Shown here: positions 1,982-53,501 of the stretch, piece by piece
How the letters are laid out: every line of letters begins with the position of its first letter
Numbering within the stretch: the first letter of the stretch is position 1
Virus record (IMG/VR): IMGVR_UViG_3300043418_000114
Coordinates: 186,001 to 250,000 of that record
Reading direction: 5' to 3' (one strand)
Length of the DNA stretch: 64,000 bases
Notes under the pieces: generated by a model
Databases searched by the model: none
What the model saw: the letters and a program-made list of their open reading frames with translations, nothing else
Told to the model about the DNA's origin: nothing
Translations under genes and position numbers: made by a program

Positions 1982-2002
1982 GGAGCGTAAAGCAAAACAC
2001 AT

Positions 2003-2838: not shown

Positions 2839-3566
2839 AGTTTCATGGCGATTTCATAGGTTTAGACAATCAGAATCAAATAGAACAGTTCACTGGTGGT
2901 GATTCTAAGAATCAGTTCGAGCGTCATTTGATTACTCAGCCAGATGATTGGTATTATAGAAATACAGCTATCACATATCAATTTAACGACAATGGTCATC
3001 GTTGTAAGAACATAGAAGATGTAGACTTAGACAATTACATATTGTTCACTGGTTGCAGTCACACTATGGGAATTGGATTAGAGCTAGAAAAGACATATCC
3101 ATATCTTGTCAGTAAACGTTTAGGATATGATTACTACAATCTTGCAATTCCGGCAACTGGCATAGATGTAGTTGAATACAATTTGTTGACTTGGTGGGCA
3201 ACTATAGAGAAAAAGCCAAAATACGTATTCGTGCAGTTGCCAGATCATAGTAGATTTGTGTCATATTTTGCACAATATGATCACCTGGTAGAGCGGGGCA
3301 CGTGGTCGATTGACGATAGGGATTTACGTTTCATTGTGAATGGCGAAGACTCTGGATTCTTTCATGCCAGAAAGATTCTTCATCTAAATAACATTAAGAA
3401 TACAGTGAATGTGCCATTGTACACATTTAACTTTGGGGCACAAGTTTCATATGGATCAGAAGACTGGTGTATGAAACAGATAGATAAAGCAAGAGACTTA
3501 TCTCACAGTGGGATATTGTCCAATATTGAGTTTTCGAATCAAGTTTGTAATAGGATACCATTATGA
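2835..3566 (+). CDS. SGNH-hydrolase-like hypothetical protein
   Basis: 'GCSHTMG...YNLAIPATG...RDLSHSG' (GxS...DxxH). Confidence 0.55.
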   Translation: MKFHGDFIGLDNQNQIEQFTGGDSKNQFERHLITQPDDWYYRNTAITYQFNDNGHRCKNIEDVDLDNYILFTGCSHTMGIGLELEKTYPYLVSKRLGYDYYNLAIPATGIDVVEYNLLTWWATIEKKPKYVFVQLPDHSRFVSYFAQYDHLVERGTWSIDDRDLRFIVNGEDSGFFHARKILHLNNIKNTVNVPLYTFNFGAQVSYGSEDWCMKQIDKARDLSHSGILSNIEFSNQVCNRIPL

Positions 3567-3883
3567 TAACATTAACAGAATCGGCAATTGCCAAAATAGC
3601 AGAAGTATTAGAGGACGAGAGTCCAAGTTCCAGACTTAGAATGTATGTCCAGGGCGGTGGATGCGCTGGTTTCTCATATGGATTTACCATCGACGATCAA
3701 ACTAACGACGATGACTTTGAAATCCCAGCTGGCGCTACGACAGTTCTAGTTGATAGCATGAGCGCACAGTATTTGACTGGTAGCACAGTAGATTATGAGG
3801 AAAGTCTAATGGGTGCCAGCTTTAAAATCAAGAATCCACAAGCACAATCTACCTGCGGATGCGGAGCCAGTTTTAGCGCATAA
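3563..3883 (+). CDS. erpA: A-type Fe-S cluster carrier (ErpA/IscA)
   Basis: GGGCAGFSYGF and NPQAQSTCGCGASF motifs. Confidence 0.92.
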   Translation: MITLTESAIAKIAEVLEDESPSSRLRMYVQGGGCAGFSYGFTIDDQTNDDDFEIPAGATTVLVDSMSAQYLTGSTVDYEESLMGASFKIKNPQAQSTCGCGASFSA

Positions 3884-3937
3884 TCCAGAGTTGCCCGTTT
3901 CTCCTTTATTGATAAATACAATAATAAGGATGAAAAC

Positions 3938-5167
3938 ATGGCAATTCCAGGCATTCAAGTCATTAATGTTGGCTTACCTAATGAATCAGCAAACAGCGAT
4001 TCAATACGTAACGCATTTAACAAAACCGTAACTAATTTTAACACTCTATTCGATAACGCTAGTCCGTATAATACATACACTGGCAACACTGGCATTTCAG
4101 TAGCGGCAAATGCTACTAGCGGCACAGTAGACATAACGAATACAGGCGTCACTAACATCATAGCTGGTACTAACATTGTTGTTAGTCAAGCGAATGGTAA
4201 CGTAACAATCTCTGCTACTGGCGGAGGTGGTGGATCTGGAGGCACAGTCACCAGCGTTGGCATCGTGCCAGGAAGCACAAGTAGACTGACTGTTTCAAAC
4301 AGCCCAGTAGTGTCTGCTGGCAACATGACAATCGACTTGGCCACTAGTGGTGCGATTGCTGGCTCATATGTATATCCAGCAATCACAGTTGATAGCTATG
4401 GTCGTGTTACTAACATTGCAAATGGCGCTAGCGTTGGCACTGTCACTAGCGTTGGTATTACCCCTGGTGCAGGTATCCAAGTCACTGGAACTAACCCAAT
4501 AACGACTTCTGGCACACTTACAGTGGTGAACACTGGCGTAACTAGTTTGAGCGCTGGTACGGGCATTATGCTAAGTGGAAGTAACGGTAACGTCACTATC
4601 AGTACTAGCACATCAGGTGGTACCGTAACTAGTATTGTACTCAGTAGTTCAACATTAACAGTAACTGGTAGTCCAATTACCAGTGCTGGCACAATCACTG
4701 TAGATTTGCCAAGCACGATAACCTTGTCTGGTAACATCACAGGTGGTAACTTAAAGACTGCTGGTATAGTATCTGCTACTGGCAATATTAGTGGTGGCAA
4801 TCTATTGTCATCAGGCGGAATCCTCTCAAACAACAGTTCTGGCATTGGTTATGCAACAGGCTCAGGTGGCACAGTCACTCAACTAACATCACGCACAACT
4901 GGTGTAACAATCAACAAGATTTCTGGCGCAATCACTCTATTCTCTGCCGCTGGCACATCATCATATACAACGTTTACTGTCACGAACAGCACAGTAGCGG
5001 CAACTGACGTAATTATCGTCAATCAAAAATCTGGTACTGACAAGTATGAAGCATTCGTAACTAACGTTTCATCTGGTAGTTTTGACATTACTTTCTCAGA
5101 TACTTCAGGTACAACTACTGAGCAACCAGTATTCAATTTCGCTGTTATCAAGGCAGTGGCGGCATAA
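3938..5167 (+). CDS. Gly/Thr/Ser-rich virion fibre-like protein
   Basis: Repeated 'GTVTSV' and 'AGTGI' units; ATAAATA upstream. Confidence 0.6.
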   Translation: MAIPGIQVINVGLPNESANSDSIRNAFNKTVTNFNTLFDNASPYNTYTGNTGISVAANATSGTVDITNTGVTNIIAGTNIVVSQANGNVTISATGGGGGSGGTVTSVGIVPGSTSRLTVSNSPVVSAGNMTIDLATSGAIAGSYVYPAITVDSYGRVTNIANGASVGTVTSVGITPGAGIQVTGTNPITTSGTLTVVNTGVTSLSAGTGIMLSGSNGNVTISTSTSGGTVTSIVLSSSTLTVTGSPITSAGTITVDLPSTITLSGNITGGNLKTAGIVSATGNISGGNLLSSGGILSNNSSGIGYATGSGGTVTQLTSRTTGVTINKISGAITLFSAAGTSSYTTFTVTNSTVAATDVIIVNQKSGTDKYEAFVTNVSSGSFDITFSDTSGTTTEQPVFNFAVIKAVAA

Positions 5168-35136: not shown

Positions 35137-35808
35137 TTATCTCCAAAGTAAATCAAAGTTGCCAGCTAGTACTTTAGTAGCATTAGCAACTTTACCTGTT
35201 AAGTGATCTTGAACTTTATCATCTTGGAAACGATATGTGCGAATCTTGTCACCGCGCATGCCAGAACCAACCTGAGTCTTTCTATCACTAGCTATTTCGT
35301 TATTGTACATCATTTGGTTATTGCTGTCAACACGTTCTTGTATTGCACTCAATGCTTCGTTATAGCTATTCTCACGGCTACGACATTGAGCCGTTGCAAC
35401 TACGCCGCTTGGGATGTGCGTGATTCTGCAACTGTTTTGATGCTTGTTACGATGTTGACCACCTGCACCAGTGCCACTATACCATTCGATTCGTAAATCT
35501 TTTTGTTGTATAGTTGTTGTGATTTTAGCAGGATCGATAACGGCAACTGTCACTGTGCTTGTATGCACTCGACCTTTGCGTTCTGTTGGCGGTACACGTT
35601 GTATTCTGTGTCCACCTGGCTCGTTGTATAAGCCGGATAAATCAGTACCCTCTATCTCTAGATGGATCTCGCCTTGATGCTCATTTATCAGGCGGGTAGT
35701 TCAGCCGAGCTTGGAAGCCATGCGAATATAAGACTTCGCTAAATCTTTTACAAACAACTTACTGTCATCGCCACCTTCTGCGGCTCTAATCTCAATTACA
35801 CGTTTCAT
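35137..35808 (-). CDS. Class I release factor, RF1-type, lacking domain 1, with an in-frame UGA at codon 36
   Basis: AAGGAG SD; 'IEIRAAEGG', 'GGHRIQRVPPTE.KGRVHTST', GAGGQ and 'IRTY' all in one frame across TGA at 35701-35703. Confidence 0.85.
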
Positions 35809-36273: not shown

Positions 36274-37695
36274 TTACGACAAGTCGTAACGTGTCTTCAT
36301 CACTGTCTTCAACATGACGGCTTCTGGTGTGAAGTCTTCCAAGTCGTTAGACAATACAGAAGTTGCTAGTGCTGGGCTAAAGCCTGACACTAGTGCAGTA
36401 CCACTCTTATCGAATGACACTGGTGTGTTACCGTAACTTGCGTTCAAGTTCCAGAAGACAACTTTTGGAAGTGCGTAGCCTGCGGCTTCGTACTTACGTG
36501 CGATCATTTGCATCGCGGTGTCGTCATGCTTAACACATTGGTTAAATTGCATGTCTGAGAAGATAACAAGAGTTTCAGGCATTTCTGCTTGTGGAACACT
36601 GTTTTCTGTCGCAGTCTTCAGGATCTTTTCAAACGCCTTGTGAAGGTCTGTACTCATATCCCAGTTAGACTTGACCATTTGGTCAATCTTTTGGTTGATG
36701 TTACCCTTTAGGTGCATCAATTCTGGCTTGCTTGAGAAGGTCAAGAAGGTATCTTTGAACTTACCCTTGTTCTTATCAGCAAAGTACAAACCTAGGCTAA
36801 CAGCAACTTCCATGCAAGACAGGTTGCTCTTAGAGCCATGACCACCTGCTGGACAAGACATTGAACCAGAAACGTCAACCAGAGGAAGAACGTTTGCATC
36901 GCCAACGTAGTTAGGCATTGCTTCCCATTGCTTTTGGATCAAGTCAGTTTCAGTCTTGTTAAACTGCATCCAACCACCAATACGACCCTTCAGTACGTCA
37001 TATGGGAACACTGCGCCTGCGTTAACCTTAACACCAGCTTCGCCCTTAACGAGCTTAGTTACATATTCAGCGTATGTAGTACCATGACGGCCAAACGCTT
37101 TCTTGTAACGTGCATGTGCCACTGAAGGAACATGTGAGTAGTTGATGTTATCCCAATTTTGGGCACACATTTGTGTTTCAACAACATTAGTAAGGCCGAC
37201 TAGGCTCTTACGATATTGTTTAGGGGTCATTCCGAAGAATTGACGGATTTCACGTGCTACTTCACCTTTACGTGGAGTCCACTTAGCCGCAAGACCGTTA
37301 CCTGCACGTAGTGCATCGCCGAGCATAGTGTATGCCTTGGCCTTCACAGGCTGAGTCTTAAACACTAGCAAGTCGTCGTAACGACCCAATTCTGGAATCT
37401 TAGCCATCAAACGCATTGCGTCTTCTGGGTTAGTCTTTTCCAAGTGAACGAGGATGTCTCGGAAGACTTGACGTTCACCTGAACCACCACGTGCATCACG
37501 TGCCCATTGAGCGATACGCAATGCAAGATCAGAGTTCTCTACATAAGCCGCTGTGAAAGCCGGCACGATGTTTTTACCACGGCTTGCACCGATGTTGTAA
37601 AACAAATCAACACATGCGTTAGCACTTGATTTGCGAGCCTTCATACCATTGGTGGTACGAGTTGATTGATTCTTAACTGCTTCTGCGAATTGCAT
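36274..37695 (-). CDS. DUF2828-like TROVE/Ro-related protein with C-terminal vWA (MIDAS) domain
   Basis: 'ARD.RGG.GER', 'G.YDDL', 'AAKW.PR', DVSGS MIDAS, 'SDMQF', 'VFWNL', 'VSGFS'. Confidence 0.8.
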   Translation of the reverse strand: MQFAEAVKNQSTRTTNGMKARKSSANACVDLFYNIGASRGKNIVPAFTAAYVENSDLALRIAQWARDARGGSGERQVFRDILVHLEKTNPEDAMRLMAKIPELGRYDDLLVFKTQPVKAKAYTMLGDALRAGNGLAAKWTPRKGEVAREIRQFFGMTPKQYRKSLVGLTNVVETQMCAQNWDNINYSHVPSVAHARYKKAFGRHGTTYAEYVTKLVKGEAGVKVNAGAVFPYDVLKGRIGGWMQFNKTETDLIQKQWEAMPNYVGDANVLPLVDVSGSMSCPAGGHGSKSNLSCMEVAVSLGLYFADKNKGKFKDTFLTFSSKPELMHLKGNINQKIDQMVKSNWDMSTDLHKAFEKILKTATENSVPQAEMPETLVIFSDMQFNQCVKHDDTAMQMIARKYEAAGYALPKVVFWNLNASYGNTPVSFDKSGTALVSGFSPALATSVLSNDLEDFTPEAVMLKTVMKTRYDLS

Positions 37696-37722
37696 AGTAA
37701 CTCCTTTCTATGTGTGTTATGC

Positions 37723-37786
37723 AACAGGATGCGCTTTTAGTTTCATCTATGAATTGAAATTTTAAAGTTTGCTGAATGCATCCTAA
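37723..37786 (-). ncRNA. CAGCA-scaffold RNA copy 1
   Basis: TAGGATGC-ATT-CAGCA...hairpin...GCATCCTG; promoter at 37793-37821. Confidence 0.8.
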
Positions 37787-37792
37787 AACTTG

Positions 37793-37821
37793 ATTGTACT
37801 ACAGTAGTCATTGTATGTCAA
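37793..37821 (-). promoter_or_regulatory. sigma70 promoter for scaffold copy 1 and the TROVE-like gene
   Basis: TTGACA-N17-TACAAT. Confidence 0.7.
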
Positions 37822-37838
37822 CTGTAGTTCGAAAAATA

Positions 37839-37992
37839 AAACAGGATCGTTGTTGACTGCTTTTTGAATAGGGCCATCACTCCTATTGCGATAGATGCAT
37901 TTCAATAACTACCTTCAAAGTCCGTAGACTCCAGTAGTTACCATGCGATCCATCAGTTCCAATAAAGTAAATTATTGCTGTACCGATCCTAA
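37839..37992 (-). ncRNA. CAGCA-scaffold RNA copy 2 (multi-stem insert)
   Basis: TAGGATCG-GTA-CAGCA...CGATCCTG. Confidence 0.75.
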
Positions 37993-37997
37993 AAATA

Positions 37998-38250
37998 AAC
38001 GGGATGTTTGAACGTAGTTTATTTTATTGTCTGGTTGAGTCTAACTCACCTTTGCAGGACTTACGTTCCTCAACCATATCAACAATTCATGTTGACTATC
38101 TAGTAATTGAGTCTGCTACTAGCAACATAGAATGTCTTTCCATTCTGTCGTCTATTCCCTGAATGCTTAGTTGCCTAAGAGTATTGCTACTGTCTCCCGA
38201 CCACCTTCTATAGCTGATAGTTTGATTTTTAAATGCTGAACACATCCCAG
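37998..38250 (-). ncRNA. CAGCA-scaffold RNA copy 3 (about 250 nt)
   Basis: TGGGATGT-GTT-CAGCA...ACATCCCG. Confidence 0.7.
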
Positions 38251-38307
38251 TCATTCAATACAAGTATTGTATCATCAATACATGTGATTTTAAACTGTTT
38301 TGGGTAA

Positions 38308-39441
38308 CTATCGTAAATTAATTTTTACGTTAGGGTCTAATGTGATGCTAGACCAATTCTTGTTGAAATTGCCCCATATATCTTTCTCATTCTTGTAATC
38401 AGAAAGCAATGATAGCAATTGTGGATTGAATCGCTCAACTATCTTACGTTGAATAAGACCTGTTGTGGAATTCAGGGTGATATCCTCTACTGACATTCTA
38501 TGAATCGTTTGAGGGATTCGTATGTCTGCGAAAGGACTAAAAGTCATGTTGTTGTCAATGTGCCAATACTGATGATCATAAAAAATTGTTGAGTATAAAA
38601 ACTTCATCAACTGTTCTTGGTCGTAGTATTCTTCCATTGAATCTTTGTACTTGGCTACAACATTGGGACGCTTCAAAAACCAATAAAGATAATCAGTTTC
38701 TTTAGCTAGTTCGTCAATGTGTTTGCCTTGATAGTTTGCCAATGCGTTGATTGCTTCGCCGTCACGGTACTGATATGTCTCTGCATAGAAGCCAGTTGCA
38801 TACCAATTTAATTCCGTAAATGCACTTGATACATCATATCCCCAGTGTTTACTGGATACAAAGTCTACCAAGTCACTATCGTACTCTCTAACTCTGCCCA
38901 AAAACTTATGTAACGTATCGTCACCTTGTTTAGGCACATATGCTGTTAGAGTATAGTCTTTTGTGTAGCTGTCTAGTACAGCCCATGTTGTTAGGGTATC
39001 CAGTCCTGCTGAATACAACACATTCATGCGTTCAATATTATTGTACTTGTAGAAGTTTCGTGTGTTTTCTAACAATATATCGCCGATGATAATCGACGAC
39101 TCTTCCAATGACAGTAGGGTATCATTGGGAATTTTAGGTTCATTGTATGTAACAATGCCGTAGCCTTCAGTGGCTAGGTTTGTTTGTTCACCATTGCGTT
39201 CATATAATGGAAAACCTCTGAGAACTGGGTGATACACTTTTTCGTCATGTATCACGCACCATTTCCCAGCTGGCTGATAGCCATCAAGTATTTCTAGTAG
39301 CGTATCTGCTAGAGTACAATCTACGCTATAACCCTTATACCAGATGTTATCTTTTTGTTTCCAGCCGCCATCTAAAAACAGGCGATCTGAAACTTTGTTC
39401 ATCGCCTGTATTGGACAATTGGATCCGATGTAGAAAAACAT
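38308..39441 (-). CDS. Asparagine-synthase-like (PP-loop) protein
   Basis: 'VLYSAGLD' PP-loop-like motif and 'SPF.D'. Confidence 0.5.
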   Translation of the reverse strand: MFFYIGSNCPIQAMNKVSDRLFLDGGWKQKDNIWYKGYSVDCTLADTLLEILDGYQPAGKWCVIHDEKVYHPVLRGFPLYERNGEQTNLATEGYGIVTYNEPKIPNDTLLSLEESSIIIGDILLENTRNFYKYNNIERMNVLYSAGLDTLTTWAVLDSYTKDYTLTAYVPKQGDDTLHKFLGRVREYDSDLVDFVSSKHWGYDVSSAFTELNWYATGFYAETYQYRDGEAINALANYQGKHIDELAKETDYLYWFLKRPNVVAKYKDSMEEYYDQEQLMKFLYSTIFYDHQYWHIDNNMTFSPFADIRIPQTIHRMSVEDITLNSTTGLIQRKIVERFNPQLLSLLSDYKNEKDIWGNFNKNWSSITLDPNVKINLR

Positions 39442-39665
39442 TATCGCTTGTTGCCGATGCGCTTTAGATAATCACGGCCGACTAGGCCCTTTTCGATTTC
39501 TTGCAATGCAGTAACAAGATGGCCTGCTTTTGTTGCTAGTTTTGGTCGATGACCACGGGATAATTCACGAGTACGTTGACTTGCGATTAGAATCAAATCA
39601 TATCGATTGCCAACTGCATTAACTGCATCTTCGCTAGTATAGCGAACTCTACTTTCTGTCGTCAT
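39441..39665 (-). CDS. rpoZ: RNA polymerase omega subunit
   Basis: 'T.EDAV..VGNRYDLILIASQR.REL..G..P.......VTALQEI..G'. Confidence 0.88.
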   Translation of the reverse strand: MTTESRVRYTSEDAVNAVGNRYDLILIASQRTRELSRGHRPKLATKAGHLVTALQEIEKGLVGRDYLKRIGNKR

Positions 39666-39694
39666 TTTTTACCTTTTAAGGTTGTTAATAAACA

Positions 39695-39770
39695 TGGAGC
39701 GGGAAAAGGGGCTCGAACCCTCGACCTATACCTTGGCAAGGTATCGCTCTACCAACTGAGCTATTCCCGC
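39695..39770 (-). tRNA. tRNA-Gly(GCC)
   Basis: Cloverleaf; loop TTGCCAA; CCA. Confidence 0.92.
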
Positions 39771-39776
39771 ATGTTC

Positions 39777-39851
39777 TGGTACATCGACACGGTTTCGAAC
39801 CGCGGACCCTCTCCGTGTAAAGGAGACGCTCTACCCCTGAGCTATCGATGC
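39777..39851 (-). tRNA. tRNA-Val(TAC)
   Basis: Loop TTTACAC; CCA. Confidence 0.9.
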
Positions 39852-39862
39852 ATATATTCTAT

Positions 39863-40218
39863 TTAGCCACCCTGTTGGCTATCTTTAATTTCTGTTCCCC
39901 AGTCAATTTCCTTCTTGTCATCAGACATATCAGGTAATGGAGGTGGAACGTAACGTTCACGCTTTGGCTTTTCACCAAAGATTTTGTCCATGTTCTCACC
40001 GAATTCTGTAGGACTAATACTAAATGGACGAGGACGAGAACCCTTGCTCATTACTTAGATTCCTTACGTGAACCCTTCTGACGGGCATCGCTCTCTGCGA
40101 TTTGTGTAAAGCTACGCAAGAATGCGCCACGCTTGTGTGAATCTAGAATTGTTGCAGATGCTATCTTAACTAGCTTGCCTAGCTTCACTGCTTTTGGATC
40201 ATAACCTCTACATGTCAT
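39863..40218 (-). other. Two small hypothetical CDS (39863-40051; 40051-40218)
   Basis: SD sites; TAATG coupling. Confidence 0.55.
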
Positions 40219-40241
40219 ACTATTTTCCTTTTATGTTAAAT

Positions 40242-40319
40242 TGGTCTCGGTAGTAGGATTCGAACCTACGACCCTCTGCTCCCAAAGCAGATGCGCTAAC
40301 CAGACTGCGCTACACCGAG
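40242..40319 (-). tRNA. tRNA-Pro(TGG)
   Basis: Loop TTTGGGA; CCA. Confidence 0.92.
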
Positions 40320-40325
40320 ATTGTT

Positions 40326-40398
40326 TGGATGCGGGTGACAGATTCGAACTGCCGATGCTCCGAGCTTATGAGACTGGAGTGGTGACCACCCTACCCGC
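40326..40398 (-). tRNA. Atypical initiator-like tRNA-Met(CAT)
   Basis: C1:A72 mismatch; loop CTCATAA; shrunken D arm; CCA. Confidence 0.7.
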
Positions 40399-40410
40399 GT
40401 AAATCGTTTT

Positions 40411-40485
40411 TGGTGCGTGATAGAGGGATCGAACCTCTGACCTTCTCAATGTCACTGAGATATTCTACCGCTGAAATAATCACGC
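40411..40485 (-). tRNA. tRNA-Val(GAC)
   Basis: Loop GTGACAT; CCA. Confidence 0.85.
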
Positions 40486-40490
40486 ATTTT

Positions 40491-40610
40491 AACAGGTTCT
40501 CTTTTTTCGTGCTACCACTACACCAACGCGAAGACCAACTCGCGCCTGGGATTCGAACCCAGCCCCTCTTTTTTACAGAAAGATTATTAAGATTGCTGAA
40601 AAGAACCTAA
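40491..40610 (-). ncRNA. CAGCA-scaffold RNA copy 4, enclosing a circularly permuted tRNA-Tyr(GTA)-like domain
   Basis: TAGGTTCT-TTT-CAGCA, anticodon arm TCTTT-CTGTAAA-AAAGA, T arm, closed acceptor, D arm, AGAACCTG. Confidence 0.85.
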
Positions 40611-40620
40611 TGGTCAAACT

Positions 40621-40696
40621 TGGTGGAGGTGACAGGACTCGAACCCGCTACCTATTGCTTGCAAAGCAACCGCTCTCCCAGGTGAGCTACACCCCC
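40621..40696 (-). tRNA. tRNA-Ala(TGC)
   Basis: G3:U70; loop TTTGCAA; CCA. Confidence 0.92.
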
Positions 40697-40771
40697 GAAA
40701 TTTGTTACACACTACTTATCTCATTATACGCCATGTGTAAGGGCGAGGCTTCTAACTCTTTCGAGTTTTGT

Positions 40772-40848
40772 TGGTGCGGATGGTGGGACTCGAACCCACA
40801 AAATTTGGCTTCTAAGACCAACACGTATACCAATTCCATCACATCCGC
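40772..40848 (-). tRNA. tRNA-Leu(TAG), short variable loop
   Basis: Loop CTTAGAA; CCA. Confidence 0.88.
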
Positions 40849-40859
40849 GTAATTCTATT

Positions 40860-40937
40860 TATACTGAAACACACTAACCAAGTCTCCTAACCTGTATCAA
40901 CTGCCCCACTTGTGCAGTTATCAATGCGTTTTAGTAT
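40860..40937 (-). repeat. Long-stem element (family 2)
   Basis: TATACTAAAACGCATTG...TAGTGTGTTTCAGTATA. Confidence 0.65.
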
Positions 40938-41118
40938 AAAGGCTATCAGAGGCTTGCCATCGCCCTTAGGTTATACTGATATTACTCGTTGAAATATACC
41001 GAAGTATAGAGTTGGATTCAACAAGACCCTACTACTCACCTAAACTCATGTAGTCTGTAACGCATCATCATGAAGGGTCCAGCGACCTCTATCGTTACAG
41101 CATCTGGTTACATTCTTT

Positions 41119-41200
41119 CTATACTGAAACACACTGACTCTCCAGTATTTCTACTTTCGCCGAGTTTGACCGCGTAGTCGTGCAATGTGTTTTAGTATAG
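41119..41200 (-). repeat. Long-stem element (family 2)
   Basis: CTATACTAAAACACATTG...CAGTGTGTTTCAGTATAG. Confidence 0.65.
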
Positions 41201-42079
41201 TGGAGCACTGAGAATACATGCTTACCGAGTAACACCTCAGACATTATTACAATCCTTGCGAGACTGCTTTCTTCTGACTTCCACTGCAACCTCTTGCGAG
41301 TATCACAGTCTGTTACCAACATCGCCGTTTTAAGTCAGGCATTAGACTTGACGCTGTATGCTATTCTACGCTTTCTATCCCGTTGACCTTTAGAGCCATT
41401 CACTACCGCTAAGTAGTTACGAAACTTCCTGCATAAACAGATTTCACCTTGCGAGTTACGTCTGACTGGATTATCTTGCGACTCCAGTATTAGATGCTTT
41501 TCACATACAACCGAGACAGACTTTGCTTTTTTAATCGATAGAAGGGATCGAACCTTCAGCCGACTGCTTGAAAATGCAGTTGATCTACCATTGATCTATA
41601 TCAACCTACTGTGATGTGCTGTCTCAGTTGCTTCATAATCTTTTGGACTACAAAATACAACACGCCACGTACCTTTTGTCTCGCGGACTACTCAGTCGTC
41701 TTTCACGATTAATGTCGGGTCTCGGCTTTCGCGTACCTCCATCAACCATTCAAACTGCATTACAACTCTTAGATGCGACTCCTCGAATCATAACACTACC
41801 CTTTCTCATACCAATTAACTGGACTGGTTTTGTCGTGAGGTCAGCACCACCTGTTACTCTCTAATGACTTGCGTTACCCTCGATATTATCTCAGGCGCTT
41901 AAGCCACTAATTCTTTCCACAACTTCCAGCGTCATTGTTATCACCACCGGTCTTATCAGTGATGAAACCCTCGCGGGTTTGAGCAGGCTTGCTTAGATGA
42001 ACTATTTCTAGCGCGGGTCTGTAGGAGACTACCGCTTTGGGCCGATCACTCGGCTTATTCTAATGAGGCTAAGCCCCCA
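41201..42079 (-). ncRNA. GOLLD-like giant structured RNA with an embedded tRNA-Glu-like domain
   Basis: About 880 nt without a credible ORF; many GCAA/GNRA-capped stems; ends GCATGTATTCTCAGTGCTCCA; tRNA-cluster context; cloverleaf at 41533-41605. Confidence 0.65.
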
Positions 42080-42083
42080 TAAA

Positions 42084-42200
42084 TTCTTATACTCGCATAC
42101 ACTTGCAATATTGAAATTGCCTACCGGAAGGATATCTCACATCCAGCTGTGTCCGCTCACATCCGTATGGCCTATACGTTTATGTATGCGAGTATAAGAA
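42084..42200 (-). repeat. Long-stem element (family 2-like)
   Basis: 17-bp perfect stem TTCTTATACTCGCATAC / GTATGCGAGTATAAGAA. Confidence 0.6.
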
Positions 42201-42204
42201 CTAC

Positions 42205-42309
42205 TTTCTTAACATTGTTGAACATACTAGTGCATTTCCAAATTATGCTACTCCTCATCAGGGATGGAATCGAACCAACATCCCTAATACATTCAACAAT
42301 GCTAAGAAA
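42205..42309 (-). ncRNA. YrlA-topology tRNA-mimic RNA
   Basis: About 25-bp stem enclosing T loop TTCGATT, a short closed acceptor hairpin, then D arm TAGCATAATTTGGAAATGC. Confidence 0.6.
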
Positions 42310-42326
42310 ATTCTTAGCAATAATTT

Positions 42327-42394
42327 TTTAAAGAACATCACTGATTTCTCAGTGTCAATACAAGTATTGTATAAGGTTTTTAATTCACTGTCAA
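42327..42394 (-). promoter_or_regulatory. sigma70 promoter with boxB-like hairpin and boxA-like element
   Basis: TTGACA-N17-TACAAT; CACTGA-GAAA-TCAGTG; TGTTCTTTAAAA. Confidence 0.7.
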
Positions 42395-42424
42395 CAACTT
42401 TTTTAAGATTGTTAACCATTTTAT

Positions 42425-42500
42425 TGGAGCGGGAGGCGGGAGTCGAACCCGTCTATTTCAGTTTGGAAGACTAACGTGTAACCACAAACACTTCACCCGC
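42425..42500 (-). tRNA. tRNA-Gly(TCC)
   Basis: Loop CTTCCAA; U73; CCA. Confidence 0.88.
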
Positions 42501-42512
42501 ATAAATAACTTT

Positions 42513-42865
42513 ATGCATATCTATGACGCTATCACAAACTCTGGATTACACATCCACTTGTCCATGAGCGCCGATAATACATTTTACATTCTAGTATACG
42601 ACATTGATAACTTCATGTTAACTATGAAATTTTTCAACAATGTAGATACTGCAATGCAATTTATCCATTCACTATGAGTAGCCCAACAGATTACGAAATC
42701 TTATATAGATTAAACACTAGTCCATATGCAGAGACTAAGAGTTGGGTACTGCCTAATACATTCAAAGCAATGTTCTCAAATGAGAACTTACCTGAATTTG
42801 TTATTGATGAACTATTAAAGAAACAGACGTTTAAATTAGACGATCAGTTTCCTCAATACAAATAA
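42513..42865 (+). other. Two small coupled CDS (42513-42677, 42674-42865) antisense to the tRNA array
   Basis: ATAAATA upstream; ATGA overlap. Confidence 0.5.
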
Positions 42866-42867
42866 TC

Positions 42868-42943
42868 TGGCATCCCGGGAGGGATTTGAACCCCCAACTT
42901 ACGGTTTTGGAGACCGTTGCTCTGCCAATTGAACTACCGAGAT
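42868..42943 (-). tRNA. tRNA-Trp(CCA)
   Basis: Loop CTCCAAA; G73; CCA. Confidence 0.9.
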
Positions 42944-42949
42944 ATATAA

Positions 42950-43010
42950 AACAGGATGCTTATTTTTCAATTAAAAGTTGAATTATAAGATGTTGCTGGA
43001 CGCATCCTAA
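42950..43010 (-). ncRNA. CAGCA-scaffold RNA copy 5, with a bare Lys(TTT) anticodon stem-loop
   Basis: TAGGATGC-GTC-CAGCA...TTCAA-CTTTTAA-TTGAA...GCATCCTG. Confidence 0.85.
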
Positions 43011-43014
43011 AACT

Positions 43015-43104
43015 TGGCGGAAACGGTGAGATTCGAACTCACGGACCCTTTGAAAGATCGCCGGTTTTCAAGACCGGAGCCATAGACCACTCGACCACGT
43101 TTCC
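43015..43104 (-). tRNA. tRNA-Ser(TGA)
   Basis: Loop CTTGAAA; long V arm; G73; CCA. Confidence 0.92.
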
Positions 43105-45227: not shown

Positions 45228-45656
45228 TTATTTGTTTTTGCCACACCAAGTGTCAGTCTGTGAATGACAATTGGGACAGAGTAATCTTAAGTTTTTAAAC
45301 TTGTGATTGTGATTATCGCCGTCTATGTGATCTAAATGTAGAGAAATTTCTTTTCCCATCCATTCTTCTAATCCACACGACGAGCATTTGTTATCTAATA
45401 TTTTTTCTTTTAACAAACGCTTTTTCAGTTTTAGTGTTTGATATGTAGGATGCAATCCTTCTAGAATTTCATTCAACTCTATCTTCTTTGCACCACCACC
45501 TATCTTAAAATCTAAACCTAATCTTTTTGCTCTACGCCAAACTGTAACATCTGGCACATTAAAATAATGTGCTAACTTGCTCAAGACTGGCGTAATGTTA
45601 TACTGTTCTATCAATTCAGTATCTGTAAACTTTTCTGTACTATGTTTTTGTTTCAT
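45228..45656 (-). CDS. HNH endonuclease
   Basis: CxxC...LHLDHIDGD..N....NLRLLCPNCH. Confidence 0.88.
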   Translation of the reverse strand: MKQKHSTEKFTDTELIEQYNITPVLSKLAHYFNVPDVTVWRRAKRLGLDFKIGGGAKKIELNEILEGLHPTYQTLKLKKRLLKEKILDNKCSSCGLEEWMGKEISLHLDHIDGDNHNHKFKNLRLLCPNCHSQTDTWCGKNK

Positions 45657-47310: not shown

Positions 47311-47871
47311 CTACGAAAGCAAGATTCTAGAATGCTTTGGCACACCTGCCATCAAGTATTCCATTTGGTCTGCAAGAATTGTTCGTTGTTGCAGAATCAT
47401 GTTTTCATAGTGGTTAGGTTCATAAGGAACATAAAGTAGTTCCATACGTGCTTCTTTCAAAGACTTATGACCCTTCTTAGAGTTACATTCCTTACATGCA
47501 GTAACTACGTTCATCCAAGTGTTGTCGCCGCCATGGTACCGAGGTACAATGTGGTCACGGCTTAGATTGTGATAGTTAGGGAAATGTCCACCACAGTATG
47601 CACAAACATACCGGTCACGACCAAACAATGTCTTGTTAGTCAATGCAACATGTGCGTGACGATGTGGGTTATAACCATGACCCTTGATAGCAATAATAGA
47701 AGGAGATTCTAGGTAGCTTAGTGATCCGTCACGTTGTACGCCACCACGATACTTCGCAACAATTTCACCCATAGACCATGCTACGGAGTCAGTTGCGTGA
47801 TATGCAATTGCGTCATCGTTTGAGATCCATTGCCGGGGAACTCCTGAAATATCTAGTGCTAGAACAGCCAT
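47311..47871 (-). CDS. HNH endonuclease (McrA-like)
   Basis: RD..VCAYCG...DHIVP...GG..TW.NVVTACKECN. Confidence 0.88.
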   Translation of the reverse strand: MAVLALDISGVPRQWISNDDAIAYHATDSVAWSMGEIVAKYRGGVQRDGSLSYLESPSIIAIKGHGYNPHRHAHVALTNKTLFGRDRYVCAYCGGHFPNYHNLSRDHIVPRYHGGDNTWMNVVTACKECNSKKGHKSLKEARMELLYVPYEPNHYENMILQQRTILADQMEYLMAGVPKHSRILLS

Positions 47872-48482: not shown

Positions 48483-48572
48483 TGGCAGAGAGTAAGGGAT
48501 TCGAACCCTTGTGCCGCGCTAGCGACCATCACCTTTCCAAGATGCGCCCTTAAGCCTCTCGGGCAACTCTCT
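48483..48572 (-). tRNA. tRNA-Ser(GGA)
   Basis: Loop TTGGAAA; long V arm; CCA. Confidence 0.85.
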
Positions 48573-48577
48573 ATATT

Positions 48578-48676
48578 TGGTGCCTCTGGCAGGACTCGAA
48601 CCTGCACACTGTGGCTTATCTAGCCACTGCTTTGGGGAGGTATAAGCTCCCTTCTTTACCATTAAGCTACAGAGGC
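48578..48676 (-). tRNA. tRNA with TAT anticodon (Ile AUA) and about 29-nt variable region
   Basis: GGGAG-CTTATAC-CTCCC; V hairpin GTGGCT-AGATA-AGCCAC; A73; CCA. Confidence 0.75.
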
Positions 48677-50907: not shown

Positions 50908-51447
50908 TCATTTTACAACATCTTGCCAACGAATGACTAGTGATTTGTCGTAATTTTGAGTTTTGTTCTTTCTGCGATTTTCCAATGCAGGAAGATACTG
51001 AAAGTTATCAGGATGATGTAGACCTCCGCATGCCAATGGCACAATATGGTCGACTTCGTATCCAGTTGGACAACTCTCGTAAATTTTTCGAATTAACTGA
51101 CTATCAACGTAATCAGGTGTTGCGTTGTACTTTCTCGCTCTATAGTTTTGTACATTCAACACATTTAATTTTGCAGATTCGTCTTTCGTTTTTCTTCCAA
51201 CTTTATCCCAATAAGCTATTCTAGCCTCTGATATTTTGGCAGAATGTTCTGCTGTTCTCGGCTTAAGTTTCTTTCCTTTGGTACTGGTTTGCTTAATTGA
51301 ACCAGAAGCAATTCCTTCTTTAACCGAGTTGGCTATTTTTCGTTTCGTTTCATCGGATCTAACTCTAGAGTTAGCACACGGTCTACAACAATACTTTCCT
51401 GATCCATATGATCCATCATGTTCACTATTACATTTGAGGCAAAACAT
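50908..51447 (-). CDS. HNH homing-endonuclease-like protein
   Basis: N-terminal Cys motifs; NUMOD-like basic helices; 'EVDHIVPL..GGLH...N.QYL...ENRRK'. Confidence 0.82.
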   Translation of the reverse strand: MFCLKCNSEHDGSYGSGKYCCRPCANSRVRSDETKRKIANSVKEGIASGSIKQTSTKGKKLKPRTAEHSAKISEARIAYWDKVGRKTKDESAKLNVLNVQNYRARKYNATPDYVDSQLIRKIYESCPTGYEVDHIVPLACGGLHHPDNFQYLPALENRRKNKTQNYDKSLVIRWQDVVK

Positions 51448-51908: not shown

Positions 51909-52022
51909 AACAGGATACATTCTTGACGAATGCTCTACCAATTGAGCTAATCTCGCATGAAGCGAAATGTTGGAATCGAACCAACGACACATCGTTTGAT
52001 GTAGTTTGCTGTATGTATCCTA
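51909..52022 (-). ncRNA. CAGCA-scaffold RNA copy 6, with a permuted T-acceptor-D tRNA mimic
   Basis: TAGGATAC-ATA-CAGCA, tetraloop hairpin, GTTGG-TTCGATT-CCAAC, closed acceptor, TAGCTCAATTGGTAGAGC, GTATCCTG. Confidence 0.85.
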
Positions 52023-52026
52023 AAAT

Positions 52027-52146
52027 TGGCGCCGCCGGAGGGATTCGAACCCCCATCTCTTCCTTGACATGGAATTTTTATATGCTGAACGTACTCTGTA
52101 CAGAGTCACTTTTTATAAGTGTCCTGATCCATTAGACGACAGCGGC
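52027..52146 (-). tRNA. tRNA-Asp(GTC)-like gene with a permuted CAGCA scaffold inserted between the D and anticodon arms
   Basis: GCCGCTG/CGGCGGC-G-CCA; insert ...ACTCTGT-AC-AGAGTAC-GTT-CAGCA-TATAAAAA; TTCC-ATGTCAA-GGAA. Confidence 0.75.
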
Positions 52147-52510: not shown

Positions 52511-52571
52511 AACAGGATGCGTTTTTGCTTTTTACCAATAAAAGTTTTTTTAATTGCTGAATGCATCCTAA
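52511..52571 (-). ncRNA. CAGCA-scaffold RNA copy 7
   Basis: TAGGATGC-ATT-CAGCA...CTTTT-ATTGGTA-AAAAG...GCATCCTG. Confidence 0.8.
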
Positions 52572-53399: not shown

Positions 53400-53501
53400 A
53401 ACAGGATAGTTGTTTTGCAGGGGGAATTGAACCCCCAAGGTTTGATTAGAAGTCAAATTGTGAACCGTTCACATGCGTATTGTTTGCTGTAACTATCCTA
53501 A
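53400..53501 (-). ncRNA. CAGCA-scaffold RNA copy 8, enclosing D-like, Arg(TCT) anticodon and T arms
   Basis: TAGGATAG-TTA-CAGCA...TTTGA-CTTCTAA-TCAAA, GGGGG-TTCAATT-CCCCC...CTATCCTG. Confidence 0.85.

What the first reader, a model, noticed from the sequence alone, without database searches (positions are those of the whole stretch)
40491..40610. Complete circularly permuted tRNA-Tyr inside a CAGCA scaffold
The order on the minus strand is: scaffold 5' strand, anticodon arm (TCTTT-CTGTAAA-AAAGA), GGGG, T arm (CTGGG-TTCGAAT-CCCAG), acceptor stem closed by a loop (GCGCGA...TCGCGT), D arm (TGGTGTAGTGGTAGCAC), scaffold 3' strand. The tRNA is opened at the D/anticodon junction and has no free CCA, so it could not be charged. 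It differs from described YrlA RNAs in keeping an intact anticodon arm. Copy 51909-52022 has the same topology with a tetraloop in place of the anticodon loop.
Basis: seen in the sequence. Interest (0 to 1): 0.8.

Follow-up and report, generated by a model that had tools for sequence, protein, structure and literature searches.

The report
Phage Y-like RNA displaying tRNA mimic
This is a small structured RNA gene of a giant phage: a conserved clamp-like stem carries an almost complete but closed-off tRNA look-alike, one of seven such RNAs next to a phage Ro60-like protein gene. That makes it a phage relative of the known bacterial 'Y RNA' tRNA mimics, not a real tyrosine tRNA.

Summary
Covariation in 58 distinct relatives supports all six helices.

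It is one of seven RNAs in the window built on the same scaffold (AGG-stem-YCAGCAA ... stem-CCU-GUU). All lie on the minus strand, inside or beside a 45-tRNA array. Two sit directly upstream of a 473-aa DUF2828/DUF7788 protein whose predicted fold matches Ro60.

In 47 of 49 related phage loci a scaffold RNA lies within 700 nt upstream of that gene. The same family occurs in cultured phages: E. coli phage SUSP2, a mycobacteriophage and a cyanophage.

I read these as phage Y-RNA-like (YrlA-like) partners of a Ro-like protein. Their variable module is a tRNA or anticodon-arm mimic.

"tRNA-Tyr" is not supported. Among 11 near-identical orthologs the triplet varies (GUA, GAA, GGA, ACG, UAG) while its flanks are invariant.

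Described YrlA RNAs often have a stem-loop ("V") at the same position. The novelty is therefore the anticodon-arm-like hairpin, the CAGCAA scaffold, and the short forms that carry only an anticodon arm.

Verdict: partly supported; a new variant of a known kind.

The parts
40491..40608 (-). The finding: a 118-nt scaffold RNA with a permuted or closed tRNA-like module ('class I')
   Evidence: Sequence; fold z = -3.1; best hit of covariance model R1, 140.9 bits; lies inside a metatranscriptome contig covering 40353-40606 at depth 77.
40599..40608 (-). 5' strand of the terminal scaffold stem (AGGTTCTTTT). It pairs with 40494-40503.
   Evidence: Helices 1 and 2: 99% and 72% of cells paired, and 9 of 10 pairs show changes on both sides.
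40593..40598 (-). Invariant single-stranded CAGCAA motif directly after the 5' stem strand. Proposed protein-recognition site.
   Evidence: Invariant in alignments A1, A3 and A4. Entropy 0 in the orthologs. Predicted unpaired.
40567..40583 (-). Anticodon-arm-like hairpin TCTTT-CTGTAAA-AAAGA. It occupies the position of the YrlA 'V' arm.
   Evidence: Helix 3: 5 of 5 pairs change on both sides and 85% of cells are paired. The loop is identical to that of the window's real tRNA-Tyr, but the stem differs. The triplet is hypervariable.
40546..40562 (-). T arm CTGGG-TTCGAAT-CCCAG
   Evidence: Helix 4: 98% paired. The loop is invariant.
40526..40545 (-). 7-bp acceptor-like stem closed by the conserved loop TTGGTC
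   Evidence: Helix 5: 7 of 7 pairs change on both sides. The loop is invariant in the orthologs while the stem varies with compensation.
40509..40523 (-). D arm GTGT-AGTGGTA-GCAC, preceded by TG at the positions of nucleotides 8-9
   Evidence: Helix 6: 98% paired. The GG of the D loop is conserved.
40491..40503 (-). 3' strand of the scaffold stem plus the invariant 3' GTT
   Evidence: GTT follows the stem in nearly all of the 318 elements.
51909..52021 (-). Copy 2 ('class II'): same order of modules, with a tetraloop hairpin upstream of the T arm
   Evidence: Fold z = -4.7. Rfam YrlA 31.3 bits, E = 4e-5. Relatives carry 7-nt CTNNNAA loops at this position.
53400..53499 (-). Scaffold RNA with a tRNA-like module in normal order: 3-bp acceptor remnant, D-like arm, anticodon-like arm with loop CTTCTAA, and T arm
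   Evidence: fold z = -3.1.
52511..52569 (-). Short scaffold RNA (59 nt)
   Evidence: weak R1 hit.
42950..43008 (-). Short scaffold RNA carrying only an anticodon-arm mimic, TTCAA-CTTTTAA-TTGAA. The loop equals that of the window's tRNA-Lys(UUU).
37840..37990 (-). 151-nt scaffold RNA with a non-tRNA insert. Its position about 150 nt upstream of the Ro-like gene is conserved.
   Evidence: fold z = -4.4; metatranscriptome contig covering 37887-38057 at depth 1488.
37723..37784 (-). Short scaffold RNA ending about 30 nt before the start codon of the Ro-like gene
   Evidence: Hits Rfam Dicty_Class_I_RNA at 26.1 bits.
36274..37695 (-). Gene for a 473-aa DUF2828 + DUF7788 protein with a Ro60-like fold (helical-repeat ring plus vWA domain). 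Proposed protein partner.
   Evidence: Pfam; PHROG 850 'RNA-binding protein'; AlphaFold2 model pLDDT 91.6; Foldseek PDB top hits are Ro60 entries 2i91, 1yvr and 9nep, then Rsr 2nvo, with E = 4e-8 and TM 0.63 for the best.

Best explanation
The element is a non-coding RNA gene. It belongs to a modular, phage-borne family of Y-RNA-like RNAs.

Proposed working:
1. The paired 5' and 3' ends (AGG...CCU), together with the unpaired CAGCAA after the 5' strand and the GUU tail, form a constant platform.
2. This platform is bound by the phage's Ro60-like protein (DUF2828 ring plus vWA domain), encoded at the downstream end of the same array.
3. The variable insert is a tRNA mimic. In this copy it is a nearly complete tRNA body with a closed acceptor end plus an anticodon-arm-like hairpin. 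In sibling copies it is only an anticodon stem-loop.
4. By analogy with Ro60/Y RNA, where the Y RNA tethers Ro60 to another factor and gates its cavity, the mimic brings tRNA-recognising proteins to the Ro-like ring.
5. The most likely such proteins are host tRNA-directed nucleases or other tRNA-targeting defence factors. The mimic either baits them away from the phage's 45 real tRNAs or couples them to RNA surveillance.

What is shown: the structure, its covariation, the multi-copy family, the conserved synteny with the Ro-fold gene, presence in metatranscriptome contigs, and the hypervariable 'anticodon' between invariant flanks.

What is inferred: binding to the Ro-like protein, and the platform role of CAGCAA.

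What is speculative: the decoy or tether target.
For: Structure:
- All six helices covary.
- The folds are more stable than shuffled sequence.

Family:
- 7 copies in the window.
- 318 elements (288 unique) in related viral loci, in size classes of about 60, 90-125, 150-170 and 200-280 nt.

Link to the protein:
- In 47 of 49 loci that hold the gene, an element lies within 700 nt upstream on the same strand.
- The protein has the Ro60 fold.
- Mycobacteriophage homologs are annotated 'Ro-like RNA binding protein'.
- Chen 2014 found YrlA RNAs next to Ro60 orthologs in 22 phages.

tRNA mimicry:
- 46 of 132 short elements carry a hairpin with a canonical 7-nt anticodon loop, against 0.39 in shuffles.
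- Those loops are identical to loops of real tRNAs in the window.
- The Rfam tRNA model aligns the hairpin, variable region and T arm of the SUSP2 homolog to model positions 9-63 at 31.3 bits.

Arms-race signature:
- Among 11 orthologs only the triplet, the acceptor-stem sequence, the linker and the variable region vary.

Expression:
- Depth in an RNA library is very uneven (0 to 4559) where the DNA library is largely flat, mostly 64-125 with peaks where tRNA genes lie. The finding lies inside an RNA contig.

Function of the protein in a cultured phage:
- A Ro60-like gp130 directly upstream of the tRNA genes of phage Bas63 counters the Ppl defence system, and its authors guessed that some neighbouring 'tRNA genes' are Y RNAs (PMC11482910).

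The same RNAs exist in E. coli phage SUSP2, directly after its homolog of the protein.
Against: - No binding data exist.
- The scaffold lacks the GNCGAAN0-1G motif that Chen 2014 proposed as the Ro/Rsr contact in YrlA.
- The RNAs do not reach Rfam's YrlA gathering score.
- The finding lies 2.8 kb from the protein gene and other copies lie up to 16 kb away, so synteny is tight only for the two proximal copies.
- The metatranscriptome evidence comes from assembler contigs. These have no strand information and do not resolve RNA ends.
- Variation of the triplet could simply reflect lack of constraint.
- Ppl is not known to target tRNA.
- I did not verify that Bas63 gp130 is a DUF2828 homolog.
Confidence: 0.6

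Rival explanations
1. The RNA and its Ro-like partner are the same as in the best explanation, but the job is housekeeping. The tRNA-like module tethers the ring to an exoribonuclease or to an RNA-repair enzyme, as in the bacterial Rsr / Y RNA / PNPase machine. The complex then degrades or repairs misfolded or cleaved phage tRNAs and other structured RNAs. It does not act as bait for host nucleases.
For: - It follows the known function of D. radiodurans and Salmonella Ro/Y RNPs.
- In Serratia phage BF an RNA ligase gene lies directly upstream of the homologous protein gene, and a CCA-adding enzyme gene lies nearby.
- An RF-1-domain (ArfB-like) ORF lies just downstream of the gene in the window.
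- The locus is embedded in a 45-tRNA array.
Against: - It does not explain why short members display only an anticodon stem-loop with canonical loop flanks.
- It does not explain why the triplet is the most variable part of otherwise invariant orthologs.
- No RNA ligase or PNPase gene was seen in the window among the ORFs scanned.
Confidence: 0.25
2. It is a real circularly permuted tRNA gene. The transcript is cut and re-joined, or cut in the acceptor loop, to yield a functional or two-piece tRNA-Tyr.
For: - All tRNA parts are present, with a 7-bp acceptor stem, U8, G18-G19 and the T-loop consensus.
- M. smegmatis YrlA, which has a 7-bp acceptor, is cut by RNase P and receives CCA in vivo.
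Against: - The anticodon is not conserved among orthologs.
- The acceptor ends are joined by a conserved 6-nt loop with no discriminator-CCA pattern.
- The terminal helix is a plain 10-bp stem, not a bulge-helix-bulge.
- The same scaffold carries inserts with no T or D arm at all.
- A normal tRNA-Tyr gene exists in the array.
Confidence: 0.03
3. The elements are not independent RNAs. They would be cis-acting punctuation of the long tRNA-array transcript (processing or termination signals), or decaying tRNA pseudogenes, or a repeat spread at the DNA level.
For: - They lie between tRNAs with gaps of 5-12 nt, in the same orientation.
- HNH endonuclease genes are scattered through the array.
- The family is multi-copy.
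Against: - Orthologous copies keep an invariant single-stranded motif and invariant loops, while stems change by compensation. That is not the pattern of pseudogenes.
- Many G-U pairs are strand-specific. For example, the fourth D-stem pair is U-G in 30 sequences. This argues for RNA rather than a DNA hairpin.
- The association with the Ro-fold gene holds in 47 of 49 loci.
- A scan of bacterial genomes with the same pattern gave complete elements in only 5 of 119 loci, against 83 of 119 in viral contigs.
Confidence: 0.07

Closest known systems
YrlA (Y RNA-like A; Rfam RF02553; Chen et al. 2014, PMC4201824; structure preprint 10.1101/312249)
   Same: - The 5' and 3' ends pair into a stem.
- The interior holds a T arm, an acceptor-like stem closed by a loop and a D arm, in that order, often preceded by a further stem-loop ('V').
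- There is no free CCA.
- It is encoded on the same strand near a Ro60-type gene, and phages are among the carriers.
- Copy 2 even keeps the YUAY (CUAC) that begins the V loop.
   Different: - It scores below the gathering score: no hit for the finding, 31.3 bits for copy 2, and 39.3 bits for a mycobacteriophage member, against 69.
- The 5' motif is YCAGCAA, not GNCGAAN0-1G.
- The hairpin upstream of the T arm has anticodon-arm dimensions and loop signature, with a hypervariable triplet.
- There are up to 7 copies per genome, scattered in a tRNA array.
- The partner protein is the DUF2828/DUF7788 branch, which the Pfam TROVE model did not match in my scan.
Metazoan and Deinococcus Y RNAs with Ro60/Rsr
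   Same: Both are small RNAs with a terminal stem and a variable effector-binding interior, encoded (in bacteria) next to the gene of a ring-plus-vWA protein. The Y RNA tethers Ro to other proteins.
   Different: There is no GGUCCGA-type bulged helix. The interior is an explicit tRNA or anticodon-arm mimic. Protein binding is untested here.
Dictyostelid Class I RNAs (Rfam RF01414; Kjellin et al. 2021, PMC7919456)
   Same: - About 60 nt long.
- A 5' (A)AG and a short covarying terminal stem.
- A conserved unpaired motif ending in ACAGCAA directly after the 5' strand.
- A variable interior.
- A 3' end of CUGU.
- Short phage members from four lineages hit this model at 23.6-26.9 bits, and the 118-nt finding itself at 20.3 bits. 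It is the only family, apart from YrlA and tRNA-related models, that matches the scaffold RNAs repeatedly.
   Different: - All hits are below the gathering score of 41.5.
- The family is reported as unique to Dictyostelia, is transcribed from its own promoters (DUSE), and is known to bind an RRM protein (Rnp1A).
- No link to a DUF2828 protein is known, and I could not test for one.
- The resemblance may be convergent or due to chance.
Circularly permuted tRNA genes of red and green algae (recalled from knowledge of Cyanidioschyzon merolae; not tested against sequences here)
   Same: The 3' part of a tRNA lies upstream of the 5' part, and the acceptor ends are joined by a short intervening sequence.
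   Different: The algal genes are processed through a circular intermediate, using a bulge-helix-bulge motif, into normal decoding tRNAs with conserved anticodons. Here there is no such motif, the anticodon is not conserved, and sibling RNAs lack most tRNA parts.
Phage-encoded tRNAs that counter tRNA-targeting defence (e.g. T5 tRNA-Lys versus PARIS, PMC11464382)
   Same: Both are phage RNA genes in tRNA clusters whose anticodon loops matter in conflicts with host anticodon nucleases.
   Different: Those are functional, chargeable tRNAs that replace cleaved host tRNAs. The RNAs here cannot decode and would act, if at all, as baits or tethers.

Membership tests
YrlA (RF02553) | Reaches the curated Rfam gathering score (69 bits) | tested here: not met
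   No YrlA hit for 40491-40608 even at E <= 10. Copy 2 scores 31.3 bits. Relatives score 30.8 and 39.3 bits.
YrlA (RF02553) | T stem-loop, closed acceptor-like stem-loop and D stem-loop in that order, inside a stem formed by the RNA's two ends | tested here: met
   Folds. Covariation of all helices.
YrlA (RF02553) | Encoded near, and on the same strand as, a Ro60 ortholog | tested here: met
   A Ro60-fold gene lies at 36274-37695 on the same strand, 2.8 kb downstream. 47 of 49 related loci keep a scaffold RNA within 700 nt of the gene. The protein belongs to the DUF2828 branch; the Pfam TROVE model gave no hit.
YrlA (RF02553) | GNCGAAN0-1G motif near the 5' end (proposed Ro/Rsr contact) | tested here: not met
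   The conserved 5' motif is YCAGCAA. The YrlA motif is as described in PMC4201824.
YrlA (RF02553) and Y RNAs in general | Physically bound by the Ro60/Rsr protein; carries tRNA-type modifications | not testable with these tools
   Needs immunoprecipitation or EMSA, and modification mapping.
Functional tRNA (tRNA-Tyr) | Recognised by tRNA detectors; free 5' and 3' acceptor ends; anticodon conserved among orthologs; for bacterial tRNA-Tyr, a long variable arm | tested here: not met
   Not called by ARAGORN or by Rfam tRNA at full length. The acceptor is closed. The triplet varies among orthologs. The variable region is 4 nt, whereas the real tRNA-Tyr gene is 87 nt.
Circularly permuted tRNA genes (algal type) | Termini form a bulge-helix-bulge processing motif, and the product is a normal decoding tRNA | tested here: not met
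   The terminal helix is a continuous 10-bp stem followed by an unpaired CAGCAA. The same scaffold carries non-tRNA inserts. The processing itself is not testable here.
Dictyostelid Class I RNA (RF01414) | Reaches the gathering score (41.5 bits); terminal stem plus 11-nt motif plus CUGU end | tested here: inconclusive
   Scores are 20.3 bits (the finding), 26.1 (window 37725-37783) and 23.6-26.9 in three other phages. All are below the gathering score. The stem, the CAGCAA and the CUG(U) features are shared.
Ro60 / TROVE proteins (for the partner gene) | Helical-repeat ring plus vWA domain, as in solved Ro60 structures | tested here: met
   AlphaFold2 pLDDT 91.6. The top five PDB matches are Ro60/Rsr over the full length: E = 4e-8 to 6e-6 and TM 0.56-0.63 for the Ro60 entries, 0.35 for Rsr 2nvo. 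Sequence level: Pfam gives DUF2828 + DUF7788 and only a weak vWA_Ro60 match, E = 0.009. phmmer against PDB sequences finds nothing.

The most novel reading that the evidence does not exclude
The CAGCAA-scaffold RNAs and the DUF2828-type Ro paralog would form a previously unrecognised ribonucleoprotein system with two properties.

(a) It would be a programmable display of anticodon stem-loops. The scaffold presents interchangeable tRNA identities, and the triplet and the acceptor stem are the fast-evolving parts. The display would bait or sense anticodon-specific host nucleases, making it an RNA-based counter-defence of tRNA-rich phages.

(b) It would be ancient and shared with eukaryotes. The abundant Class I RNAs of dictyostelid amoebae, so far considered unique to that group and of unknown mechanism, would be the eukaryotic counterparts of the short phage form.
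Probability: 0.12. Interest if true: 0.9.

Novelty: new variant of a known kind. Interest (0 to 1): 0.68.

Why it matters
Y RNAs and Ro60 are conserved from bacteria to humans, yet what the tRNA-like module of bacterial Y RNAs is for remains open.

This phage family supplies many natural variants of that module on a constant scaffold. They range from a bare anticodon arm to an almost whole tRNA. It also places them inside tRNA arrays of phages, where conflicts over tRNA cleavage are now known to be common.

Members occur in easily handled phages: Felix-O1-like coliphages such as SUSP2, and mycobacteriophages. This makes several questions directly testable:
- what the Ro-like protein binds;
- what the tRNA mimic recruits;
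- why a Ro60-like phage protein counters a defence system.

It also means that annotation pipelines overlook several RNA genes in each genome of many tRNA-rich phages.

Tried and rejected
- Rfam at gathering score finds only tRNAs and GOLLD in the window. A 12-locus gathering scan was uninformative for weak families because only the best 150 rows, all but one of them tRNA, are listed.
- megablast of the region against cultured phages finds only tRNA-sized matches, so the genome itself has no close cultured relative.
- phmmer of the protein against PDB sequences finds nothing useful. Foldseek against AlphaFold Swiss-Prot gave no informative hit. AlphaFold DB cluster hits are all DUF2828/DUF7788 with masked organisms, so they could not show whether Dictyostelium has the protein. 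The Atlas search likewise showed viral and some eukaryotic (Mucoromycota, Haptophyta) clusters only.
- MAFFT alone could not register the hairpin and acceptor helices across classes. I built a covariance model from class-I sequences instead.
- That model missed the window's own copy 2 at E <= 0.01 with default filters, although it found that copy's close relatives.
- The full-text search 'DUF2828' returned five papers, none of them about phage RNAs. The 2011 paper listing the proteins pulled down with a Class I RNA is not in the library.
- The scan of bacterial genomes with the scaffold pattern returned mostly chance matches: 5 of 119 loci with a complete element.
- I considered and rejected a DNA-level repeat or terminator, a tRNA pseudogene, and a true permuted tRNA. 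See the rival explanations.
Full report
**Setting**

The window is part of a 364-kb viral contig (IMGVR_UViG_3300043418_000114; locus L120 is identical). It has no close cultured relative.

Its minus strand between 54.9 and 39.7 kb carries 45 tRNA genes and a GOLLD RNA (41205-41668, 203 bits).

The finding lies between tRNA-Ala (40621-40696) and tRNA-Val (40411-40485), in the same orientation.

**Observation**

- a terminal stem (AGGTTCTTTT with AAAAGAGAACCT);
- an unpaired CAGCAA and a 9-nt linker;
- a 5-bp hairpin with the 7-nt loop CTGTAAA;
- GGGG;
- a canonical T arm;
- an acceptor-like stem closed by TTGGTC, which is 7 bp rather than 6 bp;
- TG;
- a D arm with the GG dinucleotide;
- the 3' strand of the terminal stem, followed by GTT.

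The thermodynamic fold gives the same picture (z = -3.1). Copy 2 (52021-51909) has the same order, with a tetraloop hairpin (z = -4.7). ARAGORN and Rfam do not call either one a tRNA.

**It is one of a family**

The 5' signature TAGG-N5-8-CAGCA occurs seven times in the window. All seven are on the minus strand between 37.7 and 53.5 kb, against 1.35 expected. Each has a matching 3' strand ending in CCTGTT.

The inserts differ:
- two permuted or closed tRNA-like bodies (the finding and copy 2);
- one tRNA-like body in normal order with a 3-bp acceptor remnant (53499-53400);
- three short RNAs of about 60 nt;
- one 151-nt RNA with a non-tRNA insert.

A scan of IMG/VR with the scaffold pattern, plus a search with the neighbouring protein, brought in 174 related viral loci. 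A simple stem-matching script found 318 elements there and in the window (288 unique), with GTT after the stem almost universally.

As a control, the same pattern scanned over bacterial and archaeal genomes gave complete elements in only 5 of 119 loci. The figure for viral loci is 83 of 119.

**Covariation**

I built a covariance model from 12 close relatives of the finding, using the structure above. It found 62 full-length matches at E < 1e-4.

On that alignment (58 distinct rows):
- 92.6% of pair cells are standard pairs, against 62% after column shuffling and 37-47% when partners are slid by 1-3 columns;
- 29 of 31 pairs show changes on both sides;
- each of the six helices covaries, including the hairpin upstream of the T arm (5 of 5 pairs, 85% paired) and the acceptor stem (7 of 7 pairs).

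The alignment is fitted to the model, which inflates the percentage paired. An explicit parse of 39 elements shows the same compensations without a model. Many pairs are G-U, which argues for an RNA read from this strand.

By eye in alignment A4, the nucleotides at positions 15 and 48 also co-vary: A with T in 5 of 6 cases and G with G in 5 of 6. This is what a tRNA-like Levitt pair would predict. The sequences are not independent, so it is only a hint.

**The partner gene**

Two scaffold RNAs lie in the 611-nt gap directly upstream of ORF 37695-36274. Its 473-aa product matches Pfam DUF2828 and DUF7788, with a faint match to the Ro60 vWA domain. It also matches PHROG 850, 'RNA-binding protein'.

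An AlphaFold2 model built on 64 diverse homologs is confident (pLDDT 91.6). Its five best PDB matches, over the full length, are Xenopus and human Ro60 and Deinococcus Rsr (E = 4e-8 to 6e-6; TM 0.56-0.63 for the Ro60 entries, 0.35 for Rsr).

In 47 of 49 related loci with a complete gene, a scaffold RNA lies within 700 nt upstream on the same strand, often ending about 30 nt before the start codon.

Homologs of the protein occur in 709 cultured phage records. These include Felix-O1-like coliphages and Salmonella phages, Listeria P100-like phages, Vibrio and Campylobacter phages, and mycobacteriophages, where the protein is annotated 'Ro-like RNA binding protein'.

**The same RNAs in cultured phages**

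- In E. coli phage SUSP2 the protein gene is followed by the tRNA array. The first gaps of that array hold three short scaffold RNAs and one 122-nt RNA with the same architecture as the finding. There the scaffold reads AGACC...ACAGCAA...GGTCTGG and the hairpin loop is CTGGTAA.
- In mycobacteriophage Clautastrophe three such RNAs follow the gene. One is a YrlA-type RNA that scores 39.3 bits with Rfam YrlA. Another carries only an anticodon-like arm.
- In Synechococcus phage BUCT-ZZ01 three RNAs precede the gene.

Across lineages the terminal stem sequence changes, while CAGCAA and the (C)UG after the stem persist.

**What the hairpin is**

Among 132 short elements, 61 have a best hairpin with a 7-nt loop. 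Of these, 46 fit the anticodon-loop rule (pyrimidine-U-NNN-purine-N), against 0.39 in shuffles. The loop positions are C32 in 49 of 61, U33 in 53, A37 in 51 and A38 in 53. The middle triplet is diverse: UUU, UGU, UGA, UCU, GUA, GGA, GAA, GCA and others.

In the window, the loops of the finding and of 43008-42950 are letter-for-letter those of the real tRNA-Tyr and tRNA-Lys(UUU) genes. Their stems, however, are A+U-rich and unrelated to those tRNAs.

Among 11 close orthologs of the finding:
- invariant parts: the hairpin stem, positions 32-33 and 37-38, the T loop, the D arm, the acceptor loop, CAGCAA and GTT;
- variable parts: the triplet (GTA 4, GAA 3, GGA 2, ACG 1, TAG 1), the acceptor stem (with compensation), the linker and the 4-nt variable region.

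So 'Tyr' is not a conserved identity. The parts that vary include the two that normally define tRNA identity, the triplet and the acceptor stem.

**Relation to YrlA**

Chen et al. 2014 describe YrlA as a Y RNA whose interior holds T, closed acceptor ('AS') and D stem-loops. [quoted passage not shown] In their reading the RNA's terminal stem takes the place of the anticodon stem. They found such RNAs next to Ro60 orthologs in 254 bacteria and 22 phages.

The finding therefore has YrlA topology, and its hairpin sits where V sits. There are two readings:
- the YrlA reading: a four-way junction in which the scaffold stem stands in for the anticodon stem and the hairpin is an extra arm.

Sequence cannot separate these. 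Either way the hairpin is an anticodon-arm look-alike. In the normal-order class (53499-53400) such an arm sits between the D and T arms, as in a real tRNA.

Differences from YrlA:
- the Rfam gathering score is not reached;
- the proposed Ro contact GNCGAAN0-1G is replaced by YCAGCAA;
- the copy number is higher, and the copies are scattered in a tRNA array;
- short forms carrying only an anticodon arm exist.

**Expression**

A freshwater metatranscriptome holds 72% of the sampled words of 37700-43100. Its contig depths over the stretch range from 0 to 4559, while a DNA library is largely flat, mostly 64-125 with peaks where tRNA genes lie:
- 1488 over 37887-38057, the 5' part of the 151-nt scaffold RNA;
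- 651 over the upstream 377-aa ORF;
- 77 over 40353-40606, which contains the finding;
- 1834-4559 over GOLLD.

These are assembler contigs without strand information or true ends. They show presence in RNA libraries, not mature RNA boundaries.

**Mechanism**

I commit to the following. The RNA is a Y-RNA-like partner of the phage Ro-like protein. The constant stem with CAGCAA and GUU is the protein platform. The tRNA or anticodon-arm mimic engages tRNA-recognising factors.

The conflict-related version, bait or tether for host tRNA-directed nucleases, is favoured for three reasons:
- the anticodon-loop mimicry;
- the fast-changing triplet;
- the report that a Ro60-like protein encoded directly upstream of the tRNA genes of coliphage Bas63 counters the Ppl defence system.

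The housekeeping version, surveillance or repair of tRNAs as in the Rsr / Y RNA / PNPase machine, remains a serious rival. An RNA ligase gene next to the homolog in Serratia phage BF and an RF-1-domain ORF next to the gene here speak for it.

Listeria phage workers have also guessed that abundant RNAs upstream of an Rsr-like gene are Y RNAs.

A true permuted tRNA, and a cis-acting or DNA-level repeat, are unlikely for the reasons given under the rival explanations.

**Novelty**

Phage Y RNAs with a tRNA-like domain next to Ro-like genes have been known since 2014, so the kind is known.

In the literature I could search, I found no description of the following:
- the CAGCAA scaffold shared across phage lineages;
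- the modular series from a bare anticodon arm to a whole tRNA body;
- the hypervariable triplet;
- the presence of several such genes inside tRNA arrays of Felix-O1-like coliphages.

I therefore rate it a new variant of a known kind.

**A lead noticed on the way**

The short form resembles dictyostelid Class I RNAs in four features: a 5' (A)AG, a short covarying stem, an unpaired ...ACAGCAA, and a 3' CUGU. Both are about 60 nt long.

The Rfam Class I model hits short scaffold RNAs of four phage lineages at 23.6-26.9 bits and the 118-nt finding itself at 20.3 bits. These hits coincide with scaffold RNAs. All are below the gathering score of 41.5.

DUF2828 proteins exist in eukaryotes, but I could not establish whether dictyostelids have one. 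This could be convergence or chance.

Noticed in passing
window 37725-37783 (-), 40493-40607 (-); L175 7877-7933; L030 3427-3483; L177 7829-7889: Short scaffold RNAs hit Rfam Dicty_Class_I_RNA (RF01414) at 23.6-26.9 bits and the 118-nt finding at 20.3 bits, all below the gathering score of 41.5. They share its architecture: 5' AG, terminal stem, unpaired ACAGCAA, variable interior and a 3' CUGU. Class I RNAs are reported as unique to Dictyostelia.
   Followed up: partly
window 41205-41668 (-), with 41532-41606 inside it: A GOLLD RNA (203 bits) sits in the tRNA array with an embedded tRNA-like unit. ARAGORN calls that unit with a 4-base anticodon (tttc). It is the most deeply covered stretch in three metatranscriptomes, with depth up to 4559.
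   Followed up: partly
window 52027-52146 (-): A tRNA-like gene that ARAGORN misses. It has a 7-bp acceptor stem, a D arm, a T arm and an encoded CCA. About 45 extra bases sit between the D arm and an anticodon-like arm with loop ATGTCAA. The insert contains TTCAGCA. Rfam tRNA matches only positions 10-63, at 18.5 bits.
   Followed up: no
window 37840-37990 (-) and the same position in L121-L132: A 150-170-nt scaffold RNA with a non-tRNA insert (long hairpin, z = -4.4) is conserved about 150 nt upstream of the Ro-like gene. It has high depth (1488) in a metatranscriptome. It may be the main partner RNA.
   Followed up: partly
window 35137-35568 (-): A 143-aa ORF just downstream of the Ro-like gene matches PHROG families named 'RF-1 domain peptide chain release factor' (ArfB- or PrfH-like). 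This fits a theme of translation or RNA damage.
   Followed up: no
window 47311-47871 (-), 45228-45656 (-), 50908-51447 (-): Three ORFs lie scattered between the tRNA genes: two that match Pfam HNH endonuclease models, and one (50908-51447) that matches PHROG endonuclease VII and HNH families only.
   Followed up: no
window 48483-48572 (-) and 48578-48676 (-): Two unusually long tRNA calls (Pro, 90 nt; Glu, 99 nt) with low Rfam scores (40.5 and 58.1 bits). They may carry inserts or be tRNA-like RNAs of another kind.
   Followed up: no
L161 17820-18170; L177 3771-4067: Related phages, including Synechococcus phage BUCT-ZZ01, carry a permuted tmRNA gene (about 112 bits) near the same tRNA and Ro-like region.
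   Followed up: no
L176 (Serratia phage BF) 6277-9485 and 12832-13944: In this jumbo phage the Ro-like gene follows an RNA ligase gene, with one small hypothetical ORF between them, and lies near a tRNA nucleotidyltransferase gene. My CAGCA-based scan found no scaffold RNA there, so its partner RNA, if any, has a different signature.
   Followed up: partly
alignment A4, columns 48 and 94 (window 40563 and 40518): In 12 class-I sequences the last base before the T stem and the second base of the D loop co-vary: A with T in 5 of 6, and G with G in 5 of 6. A tRNA-like 15:48 tertiary pair would behave this way. The count was made by eye, and the sequences are related.
   Followed up: partly
L056 10527-10643 (-); L114 2285-2402: A further arrangement on the same scaffold: a small hairpin, T arm, closed acceptor and D arm, followed by an anticodon-like arm after the D arm (loops CTTCATG and TTACACG). 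In these copies the opening of the tRNA body therefore lies at a different junction.
   Followed up: no
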